Shown here piece after piece: positions 22,336 through 27,197 of a stretch of DNA of 64,000 nt. A program made the translations under genes and the position numbers. The stretch's first letter is position 1. Each line of letters begins with the position of its first letter. The stretch lies in the sequence record MN871447.1; one strand, given 5' to 3'. The notes below the pieces were generated by a model, which had not been told where the DNA came from, did no database searches, and saw nothing but the letters and a program-made list of their open reading frames with translations.

Positions 22336-22623
22336 TTAATTATTTTTTTTTGATGTATTCAAACTACCATAAAACATCAAACCGATGATTCCGGTAAGGA
22401 TAGTTAAAGTTAACAGTTCGATGTTGAAAATAACTGCCCCAATAATAGAGAGGATGAAAATGGCTGAAATGACAGCATAAAGTACTTTAGTATCTTTATT
22501 ACTCTTACCTTTTTCTTCTTCGGTTTTTGCATTCTTGATGGCCAATTTGTTCATTCCAATGGCCGTCCAAAGAACAAAACTTATAACGAAGGTTAATGCA
22601 ATAATGATGATGGAAGTTAACAT
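22336..22623 (-). CDS. Three-TM membrane protein
   Basis: 95 aa, strongly hydrophobic, AAGGA RBS. Confidence 0.75.
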   Translation of the reverse strand: MLTSIIIIALTFVISFVLWTAIGMNKLAIKNAKTEEEKGKSNKDTKVLYAVISAIFILSIIGAVIFNIELLTLTILTGIIGLMFYGSLNTSKKNN

Positions 22624-22957
22624 ATTTTTTTCCTTTACTTTAAGAGTAGACTTAGACGTGAGAGAGTTGTTTGCGTTATAAGAGTCGCATACGACGATGT
22701 CCAGAACCAGACGGCGAAGCCTGTCATTTGTTCTGCAACTACCGAACCAGTAAGAGGGTTTACTGCTATTGTACCTGAACTCTGATCTTTCCTCGATTTC
22801 GGAAGAGTCAGTAGGTACAACGCCACAGCCTCGATTACAGGTGTCGGGTGGGTAACGAGAAATATCGTCTTATAACGGTTTGAGAGTGTGAGAATTTAAT
22901 TTAGCTTATCGTAAGGCGTTTCCTTCTTATCTCGTGTGCCAAGGGTGAGGTGACGAC
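22624..22957 (-). ncRNA. Candidate structured non-coding RNA
   Basis: 10-bp closing inverted repeat (22674-22683 / 22868-22877) enclosing several hairpins, in a 330-nt gap with no RBS-supported ORF. Confidence 0.45.
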
Positions 22958-23245
22958 TTAAGCGGTTACCGCTGCGTCAGAGACGTCGGTCTCGCCTGCG
23001 TCAGTCGCAGTCTCGCCGTCAGTGGCAGGAGAAATGACGGTTTTGAGGTTGTTGTAGCTATCGTGAATATAGCTGAAGATAACCAAGACCGCAAAAGCGT
23101 AGGCTGCCACTTCCATGGCAGTAGCCATGCAGAACGCGGCGAAGATTGCCAGCGCGGCAACGATCAGGGTGTCGGTGATGAAAGCAAAGATTGCTTTGGT
23201 TTTCTCAGTGAAAGAGAAAGAGAAGAACGCTTTGATTTTTTCCAT
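22958..23245 (-). CDS. Two-TM membrane protein with acidic tail
   Basis: 95 aa; AAAGG RBS; ATDGET/ATDAGET repeat. Confidence 0.8.
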   Translation of the reverse strand: MEKIKAFFSFSFTEKTKAIFAFITDTLIVAALAIFAAFCMATAMEVAAYAFAVLVIFSYIHDSYNNLKTVISPATDGETATDAGETDVSDAAVTA

Positions 23246-23325
23246 GATAATTTACCTTTTGAATTGAATAATTTAACTACGGGTGAGAGTGCACTACTCA
23301 CGCTGTTGAGAGGCAGCGCTTACTA

Positions 23326-23445
23326 CTATTTGACCGCTTTTAAGTAACCCCCTACGGCGACGGCGAAAACGCAGGCCGGGAGTAAAGCCAGGTCAAGAAT
23401 AAGTACCGAGGAAATAATCCCCAGTACCACGAAAGACGTTTTCAT
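23326..23445 (-). CDS. 39-aa hydrophobic peptide (not in track)
   Basis: MKTSFVVLGIISSVLILDLALLPACVFAVAVGGYLKAVK; GGAGG RBS; TAATG overlap with the upstream stop. Confidence 0.7.
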   Translation of the reverse strand: MKTSFVVLGIISSVLILDLALLPACVFAVAVGGYLKAVK

Positions 23446-23615
23446 TACAACGCCTCCGGTGAATGAGTTGCGTTGAAATTGGCTTTGTTAAACTGCTCTT
23501 CTGAAAGCGCTCCAATAACTCCCGCGGCGAACGCTACCAGAACTGCTGGGATGATAGTCAGTTCAAAGAAGGTGCAGATCAGCAGAGTGAGAATTAACGT
23601 GATGAAGTAAGACAT
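23445..23615 (-). CDS. 56-aa hydrophobic peptide (not in track)
   Basis: MSYFITLILTLLICTFFELTIIPAVLVAFAAGVIGALSEEQFNKANFNATHSPEAL; GAGGGAG RBS. Confidence 0.75.
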   Translation of the reverse strand: MSYFITLILTLLICTFFELTIIPAVLVAFAAGVIGALSEEQFNKANFNATHSPEAL

Positions 23616-23630
23616 GATGATTTCTCCCTC

Positions 23631-23789
23631 TTAGGATAAATAGGTAACGGAGACTAACAGAGCGAACGGCGAAACAATATACCAGACGAGCACAGAGACG
23701 AACCCGTAAAGGATGGCCATCGGTAACGATACGCCGAAACAAAGCAATGCAATGAGAGTGACAATTAATAAAAGTATACTTTCTTTCAT
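23631..23789 (-). CDS. 52-aa hydrophobic peptide (not in track)
   Basis: MKESILLLIVTLIALLCFGVSLPMAILYGFVSVLVWYIVSPFALLVSVTYLS; GAGG RBS; first gene after a promoter. Confidence 0.75.
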   Translation of the reverse strand: MKESILLLIVTLIALLCFGVSLPMAILYGFVSVLVWYIVSPFALLVSVTYLS

Positions 23790-23874: not shown

Positions 23875-23930
23875 CTGCATTTCGATTTATTGAAGTTTTT
23901 ATGAAACATCTACCTTGGGGATTGAATACG

Positions 23931-24470
23931 ATGAAGAAAATTACGCTTTGGGGACATCCTGTTCCGTTATTGGGCTTCTTGCATTGGCTGAGTTTTTTAT
24001 TGATCTACTTCGCAGCGTTGATCATTTGCATCATTGTCACACCGTTTCTACCGGCCTTTGCGACGAAGGACGGTAAACTACCGAAATGGCTGAAATGGTT
24101 CGACACACCGGACAATAGTTTAGACGGGGATTCCGGTTGGAAAGAGAAACACTCCCTCTGGGTAAAGGTACTCCCTGAATGGGCGCAAACTTACGTCGCC
24201 CGTATCTTTTGGTTATACCGCAATCCATTGTACGGTTTTTCTATTAGCGTGTTAGGTGCACCAAAAGACAAATTCCGTCAACCTGTTTTAGAGGGTAAAG
24301 GGTTTGATGTTAAAGGCACCTATAAGTCCCATTACTGGATGGTCTACTTCATGCGTGACGACCACGTGAAGAAACGCCGGTTTAAGGTTTACATTGGATG
24401 GAAACTGAAAGCAGAAGGATTTGAGAAATACCAGTTTGCATTTCTGATCAACCCGTTCCAAACGCCGTAA
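23931..24470 (+). CDS. Phage membrane protein on the late strand
   Basis: Track 23901..24470, likely ATG 23931; N-terminal TM; WFDTPDNSLDGD and WLYRNPLYGF motifs seen in other phage proteins. Confidence 0.75.
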   Translation: MKKITLWGHPVPLLGFLHWLSFLLIYFAALIICIIVTPFLPAFATKDGKLPKWLKWFDTPDNSLDGDSGWKEKHSLWVKVLPEWAQTYVARIFWLYRNPLYGFSISVLGAPKDKFRQPVLEGKGFDVKGTYKSHYWMVYFMRDDHVKKRRFKVYIGWKLKAEGFEKYQFAFLINPFQTP

Positions 24471-24483
24471 AAGAAACAAAAAA

Positions 24484-24510
24484 AAGAGAGGGCAAACGCC
24501 CTCTCTTTTT
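24484..24510. terminator. Bidirectional terminator
   Basis: AAAGAGAGGGC-AAAC-GCCCTCTCTTT. Confidence 0.85.
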
Positions 24511-24929
24511 TATACGCGTTTTAGCGATTCAATTTCGATTATCGCTTCAATCTCGAAAAACATTCGGACAAAGAAAGTAGCGATAGACAGAATACCTAAT
24601 AAGTACTCATGGTGAACACAGAGCAGAATGAATAGCGCCACAGCCACGATTAAACGCAGCATAACGTTCATCCCGCCAGTGAAAGTCAGATGCTTCTCTA
24701 TTTTTTGGCGAAGTTTACTTTTGTTCTCTGGCGTCAGCGATATTCTTGAGAGGTCAGGGAAGGAGAAGAACTGGAAACCCAGCCAGAGTAAGCGTATTGT
24801 GATCAACGTGATCACCCAGTAAATTACTGCATCCTCTAATAACGGGATTTTCGCAATAATAAGAATAGCCAGGGCGAAGCAGGAGAACAAAGAGAGTATT
24901 TTGGAAAGTAGGGTCAGCGAGTAAAACAT
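24510..24929 (-). CDS. Four-TM membrane protein
   Basis: 139 aa with four hydrophobic segments. Confidence 0.75.
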   Translation of the reverse strand: MFYSLTLLSKILSLFSCFALAILIIAKIPLLEDAVIYWVITLITIRLLWLGFQFFSFPDLSRISLTPENKSKLRQKIEKHLTFTGGMNVMLRLIVAVALFILLCVHHEYLLGILSIATFFVRMFFEIEAIIEIESLKRV

Positions 24930-24996
24930 TTTATATCTTCCTTAACGTTAACGTTTTAGAACGTCTCCGGTTCAGAGAATCGGAGACAGGGGTAGA

Positions 24997-25491
24997 TTAG
25001 TTTTCGCAGGTCAGGACAACTTTGCCCTGGATGTGAGTAGTGCCCAGCGGCATCTCTTGTGCGTCGAGATTGATTTTCGGCGCGATAGCCAGCGTTTTGC
25101 TGTTACCCTGGATCTGCTGATTTTGAGCAGCGGCGGACCACGCGTATTCCTGGTTGTTGATGAATACGGAAGTTTGCGAACGATCGCTGATGGTCATGAG
25201 GTTATCGGCGAAGGCGAAGCGCCCGGTGTTTTGGGTCAGTTTGGCTTCGGTCAGTTTCCAGCTCTGGCGAGCGGTGTTACTTTTCAGTACGAAGTTAACC
25301 GCCTTTTGATTATCGGTACCTTGCTCGCCTTTCAGAAGGATCCCGCCGGTCTGCTGACCATTGGCAAAATCGATCCCACATGACATTTGAGTTTGGGTGT
25401 ATTCTGCATCCCACACCATTTCCTGCGCAGCGAACGCAGTAGAAGACAGAGACAGTACCAGAGCAGCCACAGCGAATTTTACGTTTTTCAT
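24997..25491 (-). CDS. Exported beta-rich protein, fimbrial-subunit-like
   Basis: Signal peptide ending AFA/A; Cys near each end; C-terminal alternating strand IQGKVVLTC; strong codon bias. Confidence 0.6.
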   Translation of the reverse strand: MKNVKFAVAALVLSLSSTAFAAQEMVWDAEYTQTQMSCGIDFANGQQTGGILLKGEQGTDNQKAVNFVLKSNTARQSWKLTEAKLTQNTGRFAFADNLMTISDRSQTSVFINNQEYAWSAAAQNQQIQGNSKTLAIAPKINLDAQEMPLGTTHIQGKVVLTCEN

Positions 25492-25535
25492 TTGTTTTCC
25501 AAAAGTGAGATTGAGTTAAGGTTTTTTACTACAAC

Positions 25536-25940
25536 TTACGGATCGACACGCATCGCACGTTGAGAATCCATTTGCTGATTCTGTTCCATGCGTTCCATTT
25601 CCATCTCTAAACGACGGATCTGTAATTCTTTTTGGCGACGACTAAGATCAGCTAACCGCTCGCAGCTTTCGGCCATCTTATCGTCACCGCCTAAGGGGAT
25701 ACTTATACTAACATACCCGCCTTTATCGTTATCTGCATAACGATACTGACTACCATTATTTCCGTACGCCCCGACGTTAATCGTTGCTTGCGGGCGGCTG
25801 ACCTCACAGCTGATATCACCGTTCTGTACGCGGCCACGGTTTTCAGCTGTGTTGTTCATGATGTAAGGCGCATCGGCAAAAGCCATTGTTGAACAAGCCA
25901 GTGTAACTGCAAAGAGTAAGACTTTATTCAACATGGACAT
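25536..25940 (-). CDS. Exported protein with SISIPLG motif and C-terminal coiled coil
   Basis: Signal peptide ending AFA/D; two mature Cys; RRQKELQIRRLEMEMERMEQ. Confidence 0.7.
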   Translation of the reverse strand: MSMLNKVLLFAVTLACSTMAFADAPYIMNNTAENRGRVQNGDISCEVSRPQATINVGAYGNNGSQYRYADNDKGGYVSISIPLGGDDKMAESCERLADLSRRQKELQIRRLEMEMERMEQNQQMDSQRAMRVDP

Positions 25941-26295
25941 TGAAGCACACCTCGGGTTGGAACTGCACGTTGGGTATTACCTGCATTGCGCAGATAGGGA
26001 CGTATTTCTGTCCATTATCGTGCTGCTGGATAAATTTGTTATTGATGGTCATCGGAAAGGTCGCTCTTTCACCACCGAAAACATATTTTTTGTAGGGGAT
26101 CCCTTTCTTATCCGCAATGACCTTATTCCCAACCCGAAAAACAAAATCACCGGATTCTTTCGTATCGATGTACATCTCAATTTGAGAATAGCCGTCCATG
26201 CCGATAGAGTTAGTTTGGTTAACTGGACCGAAGTAGTGGGCAGAGGCATTCGCCGCAAAGAAGGCAATCCCTATTAAAGCAAAGCGTGGTTTCAT
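25924..26295 (-). CDS. Exported beta-rich protein
   Basis: Signal peptide ending ASA/H; C-terminal ICA...VC pair. Confidence 0.7.
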   Translation of the reverse strand: MKPRFALIGIAFFAANASAHYFGPVNQTNSIGMDGYSQIEMYIDTKESGDFVFRVGNKVIADKKGIPYKKYVFGGERATFPMTINNKFIQQHDNGQKYVPICAMQVIPNVQFQPEVCFNVHVE

Positions 26296-26306
26296 TTTAG
26301 TTTCTC

Positions 26307-26717
26307 TTATTTACGGCGACGTTGATGGTTGTTGTTGAATTTGTTGGCGAGGGTATTAAATGATTCCTTTGAGATTTTATTTTCTTTCAAGGAGCTGATC
26401 TCGACGACATTGCGTTTATCGTTGCAAGGCCATAAAGACTCAATCAATTCTGCGGTGTCGTCTTTTTCAAGACCACGATAAATCTCTTCTAGTATATAGT
26501 AGTCGCAGAAGGCCGCCGCATCTAAAATGAGATTTGACATTTTAGCCCCTTTGAAAGGATACAGCTGACTAGCAACTAATTCGCCGTCTAAAATGTAAAG
26601 CGCCACCGAAATTTTTGGTGTGGTATAAATAGCTTTGACTTTAATCTCTTTAACAGTATAAGAATTTTTATTAATAGCTTTTTGTACGTTTTCGATAGTT
26701 TTCGCAGTCAGTAACAT
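26307..26717 (-). CDS. Hypothetical early protein
   Basis: Track 26307..26726; ATG 26717 after GGAG and an AACTAAAC box. Confidence 0.7.
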   Translation of the reverse strand: MLLTAKTIENVQKAINKNSYTVKEIKVKAIYTTPKISVALYILDGELVASQLYPFKGAKMSNLILDAAAFCDYYILEEIYRGLEKDDTAELIESLWPCNDKRNVVEISSLKENKISKESFNTLANKFNNNHQRRRK

Positions 26718-26784
26718 TAATAGCACTCCAATAGGTTTAGTTATTTTATTTACGGAAAGGTTTTATCTTTCCTAAATCACTGTA

Positions 26785-26806
26785 GCTATATAGATGTTAA
26801 AAAAAT
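26785..26806 (-). promoter_or_regulatory. Putative early promoter
   Basis: Minus strand TTTTTTTAACATCTATATAGC-TACA-GTGA. Confidence 0.6.
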
Positions 26807-26834
26807 TGGAGATGGGTTCATCTCCAATTGTCTG

Positions 26835-27197
26835 TTATTTCGAATAGCTGTTACGAACGGTAGTCAGGTATTGCCCACCATTAGGAAAGTTCCCTTTCCC
26901 GTCGACGTAATCAAATGTGATTTCATGACTAGGAATAGTCGAAAGAAATCCGCGCTGGTTCGCCACGATCAGTTGTTTGATGACGTTTTGAATTCGTTTC
27001 GTCAACACCGTCAATCGAGCATTACCAGGACAAACGTTAGTGTAAATTTCGTTATAACGTTTCCCAATCAGTGACAACCTGGCAGGTGCTCGGAAAAGCA
27101 CGCGCACCCCTTCTTTTTCGTAAATTTCTTTCTCGAGCTCCCACAGACCAAAAGTCTCCATGGTATCCGGTTGTACAGGAACATCTTGCTTAGTCAT
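26835..27197 (-). CDS. Hypothetical protein
   Basis: EIYEKEGVRVLFRAP...VDGKG...TVRNSY; GAGG RBS. Confidence 0.75.
   Translation of the reverse strand: MTKQDVPVQPDTMETFGLWELEKEIYEKEGVRVLFRAPARLSLIGKRYNEIYTNVCPGNARLTVLTKRIQNVIKQLIVANQRGFLSTIPSHEITFDYVDGKGNFPNGGQYLTTVRNSYSK

What the first reader, a model, noticed from the sequence alone, without database searches (positions are those of the whole stretch)
24510..26806. Early operon of three exported proteins resembling a minimal pilin/chaperone-like module
Seen: after the 26785 promoter come one cytoplasmic ORF, three consecutive Sec-signal proteins (123, 134 and 164 aa, each with a Cys pair) and a four-TM protein. The 164-aa protein is beta-rich, ends in an alternating strand (IQGKVVLTC) and has high-expression codon bias. 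The 134-aa protein has an outer-membrane-like strand (YVSISIPLG) plus a coiled coil. The 123-aa protein looks like a beta-sandwich. Inference: a phage-encoded periplasmic or surface assembly (filament subunit, anchor or pore, chaperone) for superinfection exclusion, adhesion or receptor masking. No usher is present.
Basis: inference. Interest (0 to 1): 0.65.

Follow-up and report, generated by a model that had tools for sequence, protein, structure and literature searches.

The report
Phage cassette with pilin-like exported protein
A Klebsiella jumbo phage and several unrelated large phages share a three-gene cassette whose small proteins carry export signals; one of them is predicted to fold like a bacterial pilus subunit, although the phage has no pilus-assembly machinery, and its function is unknown.

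Summary
On the minus strand, between two terminator hairpins (26829-26804 and 24511-24480), lie five ORFs: one with no export signal, three with Sec signals (123, 134 and 164 aa, each with a conserved Cys pair) and one with four TM segments.

Only the three exported genes form a conserved unit. They recur in the same order, abutting or overlapping, in Maaswegvirus, Miamivirus, Eowynvirus, Henunavirus and at least three metagenomic phage lineages, always with different flanks. The first and last ORFs are Maaswegvirus-specific.

The pilin idea is partly right. The AF2 model of the 164-aa protein (pLDDT 83) has chaperone-usher pilin domains as its nearest PDB neighbours. In an exhaustive comparison with 48,161 chains, only 10 scored Z>=5, and all ten were such pilins. 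Z is modest (5-6.3), and no sequence homology is detectable.

The 123-aa protein is a generic closed Ig-like sandwich, not PapD-like. The 134-aa protein gives only sub-threshold TolC/OEP-like signals. A complete close-relative genome has no usher and no PapD chaperone.

The family is small and was found only in phage records and phage-like contigs. Binding among the three, expression timing and function remain untested. My best guess is an usher-independent envelope complex with an accessory role such as superinfection exclusion.

The parts
26804..26829 (-). Terminator-like hairpin ending the upstream unit.
   Evidence: 11-pair stem plus T run; sequence. No sigma-70 consensus was found here. 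A software-predicted promoter is annotated at the equivalent place in FBKp24.
26307..26726 (-). First ORF of the unit, 136-139 aa, with no signal peptide or TM segment. It is Maaswegvirus-specific and not part of the conserved cassette.
   Evidence: A homologue was found only in FBKp24 (62% identity), not beside the trio in other lineages. No Pfam, PHROG or NCBIfam family.
25924..26295 (-). p123: Sec-exported protein of about 104 mature residues. It is a closed seven-strand Ig-like beta-sandwich with a conserved C102-C117 pair and a conserved F-x-P near the mature N-terminus. Its stop overlaps the start of p134 by 17 nt.
   Evidence: alignments; AF2 pLDDT 85; generic Ig-like neighbours, best Z 8.4; overlap and signal peptide in 8 lineages.
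25536..25940 (-). p134: Sec-exported protein of about 112 mature residues. It has a highly conserved mature N-terminus (D-A-P-Y-I-x-N-N), two amphipathic beta segments (the second is YVSISIPLG), a conserved C45-C93 pair and a C-terminal amphipathic helix of about 35-40 residues. It matches phrog_37374 (function unknown).
   Evidence: alignments; phrog_37374 in 8 of 8 members, best E 1.9e-10; PF02321 OEP at 10.2-18.6 bits against a cut-off of 22, in the same register in 4 members; Atlas model pTM 0.38; TolC and YadA-anchor neighbours at TM about 0.5; hhalign gave no support.
24997..25491 (-). p164: Sec-exported protein of about 143 mature residues with a chaperone-usher-pilin-like Ig fold. A conserved 15-residue N-terminal segment (E-Q-V-W-D-A-E) precedes the first strand. 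The last strand (GTTHIQGKVVLTC) is invariant, and C38-C162 form a conserved pair.
   Evidence: alignment; AF2 pLDDT 83; Foldseek: CfaB, CS17, CS20, FimA, PapA, CooA; VIA Z 5-6.3; all 10 chains with Z>=5 of 48,161 are CU pilins; Atlas: SEF14, CS1, SCPU and DUF4402 neighbours; only 9 family representatives in 1.84 billion proteins.
24510..24929 (-). Last ORF of the unit, 139 aa with four predicted TM segments. It is Maaswegvirus-specific and not part of the conserved cassette.
   Evidence: hydropathy peaks; homologue only in FBKp24, 53% identity; no family hits.
24480..24511 (-). Strong intrinsic-terminator-like hairpin (14 pairs plus T run) that ends the unit.

Best explanation
Shown: the window is a Maaswegvirus (FBKp24-like, about 305 kb) virulent Klebsiella jumbo phage. 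The conserved functional unit is the three middle genes only. It is a small mobile accessory cassette found in several unrelated lineages of large phages of Enterobacterales. Each of its three proteins carries a Sec signal peptide, so they are predicted to be exported to the periplasm, and each has a conserved Cys pair that could form a disulfide there. The last and best-conserved protein (p164) is predicted to fold like the subunit domain of chaperone-usher pili. The first (p123) is a plain closed Ig-like sandwich. The second (p134) has a beta-hairpin-rich head followed by a long amphipathic helix.

Inferred: the three act together at the envelope of the infected cell as a small hetero-complex or short oligomer. 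Because the cassette has neither usher nor PapD-type chaperone, assembly would have to be usher-independent, probably by beta-strand complementation of the pilin-like subunit. The strand could be its own conserved N-terminal segment or one from a partner. p134's helix would then serve as an oligomerising or anchoring element.

Inferred: these phages are virulent and the cassette behaves like a moron, inserted next to tRNA genes, tk, a helicase and so on. Its role is therefore more likely an accessory envelope function, such as blocking a second infection or masking or occupying a surface or periplasmic structure, than adhesion.
For: - Identity of the phage: 100% to MN871447; FBKp24, Maaswegvirus.
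- Cassette conservation: tblastn finds all three proteins in the same 21-24 phage records of four genera. The order is the same and the flanks differ in Miami, Eowyn, pEp_SNUABM_01 and FBKp24. The same holds in metagenomic contigs L009, L010, L011, L018 and L021.
- Gene 1 and gene 2 overlap or abut (-17 to +10 nt), and all 24 proteins carry signal peptides.
- The flanking ORFs are not conserved with the trio.
- Purifying selection: p164 dN/dS is about 0.11 against FBKp24.
- Pilin-like fold of p164: Foldseek's top hits are CfaB, CS17, CS20, FimA, PapA and CooA. An exhaustive VIA search gives only 10 of 48,161 chains at Z>=5, all CU pilins or pilin domains, and the top 16 hits are all CU pilins. 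Protein-language-model neighbours include SEF14, CS1, SCPU and DUF4402 fimbrial families.
- The alignments run from the model's first strand to its last residue against pilin strands A to F. The conserved residues 22-36 are matched only in polymer forms, where the pilin N-terminal extension is present.
- No usher and no PapD_N in the complete relative genome.
- Phage-restricted: only 9 representatives in 1.84 billion proteins, one stray 592-bp contig in 185,579 species genomes and none in plasmids.
Against: - No evidence here that the three proteins touch one another. The single complex job gave no verdict (see Tried and rejected).
- The fold match is modest (best Z 6.3, TM about 0.4-0.5). It has no sequence support from Pfam, NCBIfam, a PDB profile search or hhalign.
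- It is unresolved whether the p164 fold is open (needing a donor strand) or closed. A weak hhalign match of its C-terminal strand to the FimA N-terminal donor strand (probability 9.5%) could mean that it is naturally self-complemented and monomeric.
- The tail after the last strand varies from 2 to about 24 residues, unlike classical pilins.
- A distant homologue (P0044) stands without the two partners.
- No expression-timing data exist.
- The exclusion or masking role is pure inference from context.
Confidence: 0.38

Rival explanations
1. A true minimal fibre system. p164 polymerises by donor-strand exchange into a periplasmic or surface filament, p123 acts as a one-domain chaperone or cap, and p134 oligomerises into a TolC-like outer-membrane hairpin-helix pore or anchor that replaces the usher.
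For: - Specific pilin-like fold plus a conserved N-terminal segment with an alternating W-x-A-x-Y/I face before the first strand.
- Other neighbours are usher-free donor-strand fibres: TasA, archaeal cannulae and bundling pili.
- p134 matches PF02321 OEP in the same register (profile positions about 33-105, covering the hairpin and the following helix) in 4 divergent members, and it has TolC and YadA-anchor structural neighbours.
- p164 has the highest CAI of the unit.
Against: - OEP scores are all below the cut-off (at most 18.6 against 22 bits), and hhalign against eight E. coli OEP repeats gives probability 0.35%.
- The Atlas model of p134 is poor (pTM 0.38).
- p123 has no chaperone-specific likeness.
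- There is no evidence of polymerisation.
- A virulent phage has no obvious use for an adhesive fibre.
- The C-terminal tail of p164 varies in length.
Confidence: 0.15
2. A pilin mimic aimed at the host. p164 is taken up by, or jams, the host's own chaperone-usher machinery (Klebsiella type 1, type 3 or other fimbriae), capping or blocking fimbrial assembly. p123 and p134 assist or have separate targets.
For: - The closest structural neighbours include the terminator or inhibitor subunits FimI and PapH as well as FimA.
- All known hosts of the carrying phages are Enterobacterales, a group known to be rich in chaperone-usher fimbriae.
- There is no cognate chaperone or usher in the phage.
Against: - The fixed C-terminus and penultimate aromatic residue that classical pilins use to dock in PapD-like chaperones are absent.
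- No sequence similarity to host pilins beyond a 25-column match of low probability.
- It does not explain the strict linkage with two more exported proteins.
- Not tested with any host protein.
Confidence: 0.08
3. Three linked but independently acting periplasmic proteins, for example inhibitors or binders of different host envelope enzymes or of rival phages' entry proteins. The pilin-like and Ig-like folds would be stable binding scaffolds only, with no mutual complex.
For: - Ig-like sandwiches are common binding scaffolds.
- One distant p164 homologue occurs alone.
- The three families evolve at very different rates: mean pairwise identity 0.32, 0.46 and 0.50.
Against: - Strict co-occurrence, fixed order and translational coupling persist across lineages that have shuffled everything around the cassette.
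- Pairwise divergences of the three families are correlated (r 0.69-0.78). Linkage alone would also give this.
Confidence: 0.25
4. A lysis-related accessory such as a spanin-like, antiholin-like or lysis-timing module.
For: - Exported proteins with a C-terminal helix lie next to a small multi-TM protein in this phage.
- In contig L009, endolysin-type genes (Hydrolase_2, Peptidase_M15_4) lie 2-3 kb downstream.
Against: - The TM protein is not conserved with the trio.
- There is no lipobox: C16 is not conserved.
- No lysis genes are annotated within about 12 kb in the closest annotated relative.
- The neighbours differ in every lineage.
Confidence: 0.05

Closest known systems
Chaperone-usher pilus subunits (FimA, FimI, FimG and the PapG pilin domain of type 1 and P pili; CfaB, CS17, CS20 and CooA of class 5 fimbriae; CsuA/B of archaic pili)
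   Same: A Sec-exported protein of about 140-150 mature residues with an Ig-like fold aligning from strand A to the C-terminal strand F, a disulfide, and an N-terminal segment ahead of the first strand. These are the only PDB folds reaching Z>=5.
   Different: No sequence-level membership. There is no PapD-like chaperone and no usher in the cassette or in the phage. The C-terminal tail varies in length and has no penultimate aromatic residue. The protein is encoded by virulent phages, and the family is found only in phage records and phage-like contigs.
Usher-independent donor-strand fibres (Bacillus TasA; archaeal cannulae CanA and Pyrobaculum bundling pili)
   Same: Beta-sandwich subunits that polymerise by strand donation without an usher. 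They appear among the structural neighbours (8aur Z 4.7, 7uii Z 5.7, 9h8b Z 4.8, 7ueg Z 4.1). This is the nearest precedent for how a pilin-like protein could assemble without CU machinery.
   Different: They score lower than CU pilins, at large rmsd (about 10 A). No polymerisation has been shown here, and the organisms and cell compartments are different.
Exported superinfection-exclusion or receptor-masking proteins of virulent phages (T4 Spackle and Imm, T5 Llp; named from general knowledge, not tested here)
   Same: Small phage-encoded proteins sent to the host envelope by virulent phages. They are accessory, non-structural and gained or lost as cassettes.
   Different: No sequence or fold relation was found. 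Those act as single proteins, not as a conserved trio. An exclusion function is only inferred here.
TolC/OEP outer-membrane factor repeat (PF02321), as a comparison for p134
   Same: A beta-hairpin ending in an s-I-P-L-type strand is followed by a long helix. Four family members match the same part of the Pfam profile, and there is one Atlas structural neighbour.
   Different: All scores fall below Pfam's cut-off. The protein is about 112 residues against about 450 with two repeats. hhalign gives no support, and there is no reliable 3D model.

Membership tests
Chaperone-usher pilin (Pfam Fimbrial PF00419, Fimbrial_CS1 PF04449, SCPU PF05229, SEF14 PF06443) | Significant sequence match to a pilin family model | tested here: not met
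   No Pfam hit at E<=1. NCBIfam matches only the signal peptide. A PDB profile search finds 0 hits at E<=10. hhalign against FimA/I/F/G gives probability 9.5% over 25 columns.
Chaperone-usher pilin | Pilin-type Ig fold (strands A to F) with pilins as the nearest structural neighbours | tested here: met
   AF2 pLDDT 83. Foldseek's top hits are CfaB, CS17, CS20 and FimA, with probability 0.9-1.0 and best E 9e-4. All 10 chains with Z>=5 of 48,161 are CU pilins. Z is only 5-6.3, so this is likeness of fold, not proof of homology.
Chaperone-usher pilin | Open fold lacking strand G, completed by a donor strand (N-terminal extension); polymerisation | tested here: inconclusive
   A conserved 15-residue segment lies before the first strand. 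The alignments end on pilin strand F. Model coordinates could not be inspected, no homo-oligomer prediction was possible, and the weak one search match hints at possible self-complementation.
Chaperone-usher pilin | C-terminus fixed at the end of strand F, with a conserved penultimate aromatic residue for docking in the chaperone cleft | tested here: not met
   In alignment A1, 1 to about 24 residues follow the conserved C162 (TCN, TCEN, TCGGAVAEN, a long tail in P0011), and none has a penultimate Tyr.
Chaperone-usher system (operon level) | PapD-like two-domain periplasmic chaperone (PF00345 plus PF02753) | tested here: not met
   p123 has a single domain of about 104 residues and no Pfam hit. 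It has generic Ig-like neighbours, and no pilus chaperone is among the top 50. PF00345 is absent from the complete relative genome G001.
Chaperone-usher system (operon level) | Outer-membrane usher (PF00577, about 800 aa) | tested here: not met
   No ORF in the unit exceeds 164 aa. PF00577 is absent from G001, while the E. coli control is positive.
TolC/OEP outer-membrane factor (PF02321), for p134 | Score above Pfam's gathering threshold; two repeats in a protein of about 450 aa | tested here: not met
   Best score 18.6 bits against a cut-off of 22. The window's own protein has no hit. hhalign against 8 E. coli OEP repeats gives probability 0.35%. The protein has about 112 mature residues.
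Sec/signal-peptidase-I exported proteins | Positively charged n-region, hydrophobic h-region and an A-x-A cleavage motif | tested here: met
   Read from the sequence in all three proteins and in all 24 orthologues. No dedicated predictor was available, and export itself has not been shown.
Lipoprotein / o-spanin | Conserved lipobox Cys at the end of the signal peptide | tested here: not met
   C16 of p134 (T-L-A-C) is absent from all homologues outside the window's closest relatives. p123 and p164 have no Cys in the signal peptide.

The most novel reading that the evidence does not exclude
Virulent jumbo phages carry a self-sufficient, usher-independent pilus-like assembly system. It would consist of a pilin-fold subunit, an Ig-like helper and a mini TolC-like hairpin-helix protein, and would build a fibre or plug in or through the envelope of the infected cell. 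Alternatively, it is a pilin mimic that hijacks the host's chaperone-usher machinery. Either would be a new class of phage-encoded envelope machinery and a new, minimal route to donor-strand assembly.
Probability: 0.15. Interest if true: 0.85.

Novelty: new variant of a known kind. Interest (0 to 1): 0.58.

Why it matters
What large virulent phages do to the host envelope from the inside is little studied. Here a compact cassette has been kept intact while moving between at least four phage genera. It contains a protein whose only structural relatives are pilus subunits, yet it lacks the chaperone and usher that such subunits are thought to need.

If the three proteins assemble, this would be a three-gene system in which to study usher-independent strand-complemented assembly. 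It would also be a candidate mechanism for superinfection exclusion or receptor masking in Klebsiella jumbo phages that are being considered for therapy. If they do not assemble, it still defines three unannotated exported protein families found only in phage records and phage-like contigs (one already catalogued as phrog_37374), each with a clear test.

Tried and rejected
- Lipoprotein or spanin reading of p134: rejected, because the signal-peptide Cys is not conserved.
- N-terminal His 'histidine brace' or copper-chaperone idea for p123: it was prompted by the GbpA and Cu(I)-chaperone fold hits. I rejected it because the His at mature position 1 is missing in the FBKp24-type and L010-type proteins, and the GbpA match lies in a non-LPMO domain.
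- Sequence routes to function all came back empty or unnamed: Pfam, PHROGs and NCBIfam and PDB profile searches for all three families.
- Searches for cellular or plasmid relatives: genome contigs gave one 592-bp contig in an actinobacterial assembly, probably contamination. Plasmids gave none. The whole-library profile search gave only 9 representatives.
- hhalign of p164 against E. coli Fim pilins and of p134 against E. coli OEP repeats: no significant match.
- BFVD: two unnamed viral structural relatives only.
- Literature: nothing on these proteins.
- Sequencing runs: only metagenomes hold the stretch, with no infection time course, so read laying was not used and expression timing stays open.
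- Promoter motif: no recurrence in the window above chance.
Full report
**What the DNA is.** The stretch 24400-26900 is 100% identical to 'Serratia phage KpLz_1_41' (305 kb, host Klebsiella pneumoniae). It is 98-99% identical to five further jumbo phages of about 300 kb. The annotated relative vB_KpM_FBKp24 places the group in the genus Maaswegvirus. The region is a long run of small minus-strand genes, all 'hypothetical' in the annotated relatives. A RelA-like gene and thymidine kinase lie some kilobases away, and no lysis genes are annotated within about 12 kb.

**Checking the observation.** All five ORFs are present as described. The unit is bracketed by terminator-like hairpins at 26829-26804 and 24511-24480 on the minus strand.
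- The first ORF (26307-26726; the likelier start is the ATG at 26717, behind a GGAG) has no hydrophobic segment.
- The last ORF (24510-24929) has four hydropathy peaks.
- The three middle proteins have textbook Sec/SPase-I N-termini with ASA|H, AFA|D and AFA|A sites.
- Each keeps one conserved Cys pair: C102/C117, C45/C93 and C38/C162. The extra Cys in the signal peptide of the 134-aa protein is not conserved, so it is not a lipoprotein.

Two side claims are weak:
- No sigma-70-like promoter is found at about 26785, and its motif does not recur. The only support is a PhagePromoter prediction at the equivalent place in FBKp24, so 'early' is untested.
- The codon bias of the 164-aa gene is modest: CAI 0.805 against 0.762 +/- 0.025.

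**The real module is the trio.** tblastn of each of the three proteins against 50,697 phage records finds the same 21-24 records in four genera: Maaswegvirus, Miamivirus, Eowynvirus (all jumbo) and Henunavirus (147 kb, Vequintavirinae).
- In each genus the three genes lie in the same order. In Henunavirus the first gene is too diverged for tblastn but aligns with the conserved F-x-P and both Cys.
- Metagenomic contigs add at least three more lineages with the full trio: L009, L010/L021 (a 375-kb contig) and L011. The short contig L018 holds the last two genes.
- Across eight contexts, all 24 proteins have signal peptides, and genes 1 and 2 overlap or abut (-17 to +10 nt).
- The flanks differ every time: a tRNA array, tk, a PIF1 helicase, an S1-domain gene. 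The window's first and last ORFs have homologues only in FBKp24.
- The cassette is therefore a mobile, co-inherited three-gene unit. It is under purifying selection (p164 dN/dS about 0.11 against FBKp24; dS is saturated for the others).
- It was found only in phage records and phage-like contigs. A full profile search of 1.84 billion representative proteins finds just 9 family representatives. A scan of one genome per 185,579 prokaryote species finds one stray 592-bp contig. Plasmids give nothing. The relative genome holds a single copy.

**p164 (24997-25491).** No Pfam, PHROG, NCBIfam or PDB sequence match was found.
- The AF2 model (13-sequence alignment, pLDDT 83) is all-beta, with strands at 38-42, 65-71, 75-87, 107-111, 114-116, 133-140 and 153-163.
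- Foldseek against the PDB returns almost only chaperone-usher pilins: CfaB at E 9e-4, then CS17, CS20, FimA, PapA, CooA and the PapG and FimH pilin domains. Other donor-strand fibres follow, such as TasA and archaeal pili.
- An aligner independent of Foldseek was run against 48,161 PDB representatives. It finds only 10 chains with Z>=5, and all ten are CU pilins or pilin domains. The top 16 hits are all of that kind (re-ranking).
- By contrast, the p123 model has 567 chains at Z>=5 spread over every kind of Ig domain. The p164 signal is therefore specific, though modest (best Z 6.3, below the tool's own 'trust' level of 8).
- A protein-language-model search independently lists SEF14, CS1, SCPU and DUF4402 fimbrial clusters among the neighbours.
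- The alignments run from the model's first strand to its last residue against pilin strands A to F. The conserved segment 22-36 (E-Q-V-W-D-A-E, with a W-x-A-x-Y/I face) is matched only where a pilin N-terminal extension is present.
- This fits an open pilin fold with an N-terminal extension, but I could not inspect the coordinates.
- Two points argue against simple membership. The tail after the last strand varies from 1 to about 24 residues and has no penultimate aromatic residue. The only hhalign match to E. coli Fim pilins puts p164's C-terminal strand (G-T-T-H-I-Q-G-K-V-V..C) on FimA's N-terminal donor strand (G-T-V-H-F-K-G-E-V-V..C) at 9.5% probability. That is a lead at most, but it could mean a naturally self-complemented, non-polymerising domain.

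**p123 (25924-26295).** The AF2 model (pLDDT 85) is a closed seven-strand sandwich. Its neighbours are generic: macroglobulin, FnIII and Ig domains, GH-family accessory domains and GbpA domain 3, with a best Z of 8.4. No PapD/FimC-type chaperone appears in the top 50. This is the fastest-evolving member (mean pairwise identity 0.32).

**p134 (25536-25940).** All eight tested members match phrog_37374, whose function is unknown.
- The mature N-terminus (D-A-P-Y-I-x-N-N), two amphipathic beta segments and a C-terminal amphipathic helix of about 35-40 residues are conserved.
- Four divergent members match Pfam OEP (TolC family) in the same register. Profile positions of about 33-105 cover the hairpin, whose strand ends in S-I-P-L, and the helix after it. 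The scores of 10.2-18.6 bits are below the cut-off of 22.
- The Atlas's own low-confidence model (pTM 0.38) has TolC and YadA-anchor neighbours at TM about 0.5.
- A profile-profile test against eight E. coli OEP repeats gave no support.
The 'outer-membrane hairpin plus helix' idea stays a lead.

**What is absent.** A search of the complete 302-kb close relative finds no usher (PF00577) and no PapD_N (PF00345), while the E. coli control is positive. This is therefore not a chaperone-usher system.

**Interpretation.** Shown: the trio is a conserved, mobile cassette of large Enterobacterales phages whose three proteins carry export signals, and one of them has a pilin-like fold. Inferred: they work together at the envelope, with assembly independent of an usher and perhaps by strand complementation of p164. 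Because the carriers are virulent phages and the cassette behaves like a moron, the role is more likely accessory (superinfection exclusion, receptor or structure masking) than adhesion. I give this combined reading about 0.38. The rivals are:
- three independent binders, 0.25;
- a true minimal fibre system with p134 as pore or anchor, 0.15;
- a pilin mimic acting on host fimbrial machinery, 0.08;
- a lysis accessory, 0.05.

**Limits.** No infection transcriptome exists for timing. No paper in the library mentions these proteins. Earlier notes of this scan on other jumbo phages describe different exported two-cysteine families in apparently early operons. They are unrelated in sequence and fold to this trio, but they suggest that exported envelope-directed proteins recur in jumbo phages. 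I did not test those notes.

Noticed in passing
window 23901-24470 (+): A DUF7338 / phrog_2143 protein (189 aa, E 4e-43) is encoded on the opposite strand, convergent with the operon and ending just beyond its terminator. It is 88% identical in FBKp24, so it is much better conserved than its neighbours.
   Followed up: partly
L017 1588-2094: A distant p164 homologue (P0044, 168 aa, E 6e-9 to the family profile) has its own signal peptide, a P-P-P-P stretch and the same C-terminal ...HGKVSITCS strand. It sits on a 2.6-kb contig with about 1 kb of ORF-poor DNA upstream and no p123 or p134 partner.
   Followed up: partly
window 24997-25050 (C-terminal strand of p164) vs L023 1116-1664 (E. coli fimA): The invariant last strand of p164 (G-T-T-H-I-Q-G-K-V-V-L-T-C) resembles the N-terminal donor strand plus first Cys of FimA (G-T-V-H-F-K-G-E-V-V-N-A-A-C). 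hhalign gives 25 columns at 32% identity with probability only 9.5%. This could be chance, natural self-complementation or a circular permutation.
   Followed up: partly
L003 1361-6501 (Erwinia phage pEp_SNUABM_01): In this Vequintavirinae phage the trio is embedded inside the tRNA gene array, with tRNA genes directly on both sides. That is an unusual place for protein-coding genes, and it is consistent with insertion as a cassette.
   Followed up: no
L013 (592-bp contig of a Herbiconiux daphne assembly): This is the only hit for the p134 family among one genome per 185,579 prokaryote species. It is a tiny contig in an actinobacterial assembly, and phage contamination is the most likely cause.
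   Followed up: no
Hits H28, H54, H72 (OR529409.1): 'Stenotrophomonas phage BUCTxx100' (252 kb) carries trio proteins with the same identities to the query as the Klebsiella Miami-like phages. The host label looks odd for a Miamivirus-like genome.
   Followed up: no
window 22336-23789 (-): Several small ORFs (52-95 aa) with strongly hydrophobic segments lie just downstream on the same strand. They suggest a cluster of small membrane proteins next to the unit.
   Followed up: no
BFVD entries A0A2I7S9Y1 and A0A482ID09: Two unnamed viral proteins (157 and 176 aa) are structural relatives of the p164 model at E 2e-7 and 7e-4 with 13-19% identity. The fold may therefore be present in further phage groups that the sequence searches missed.
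   Followed up: no
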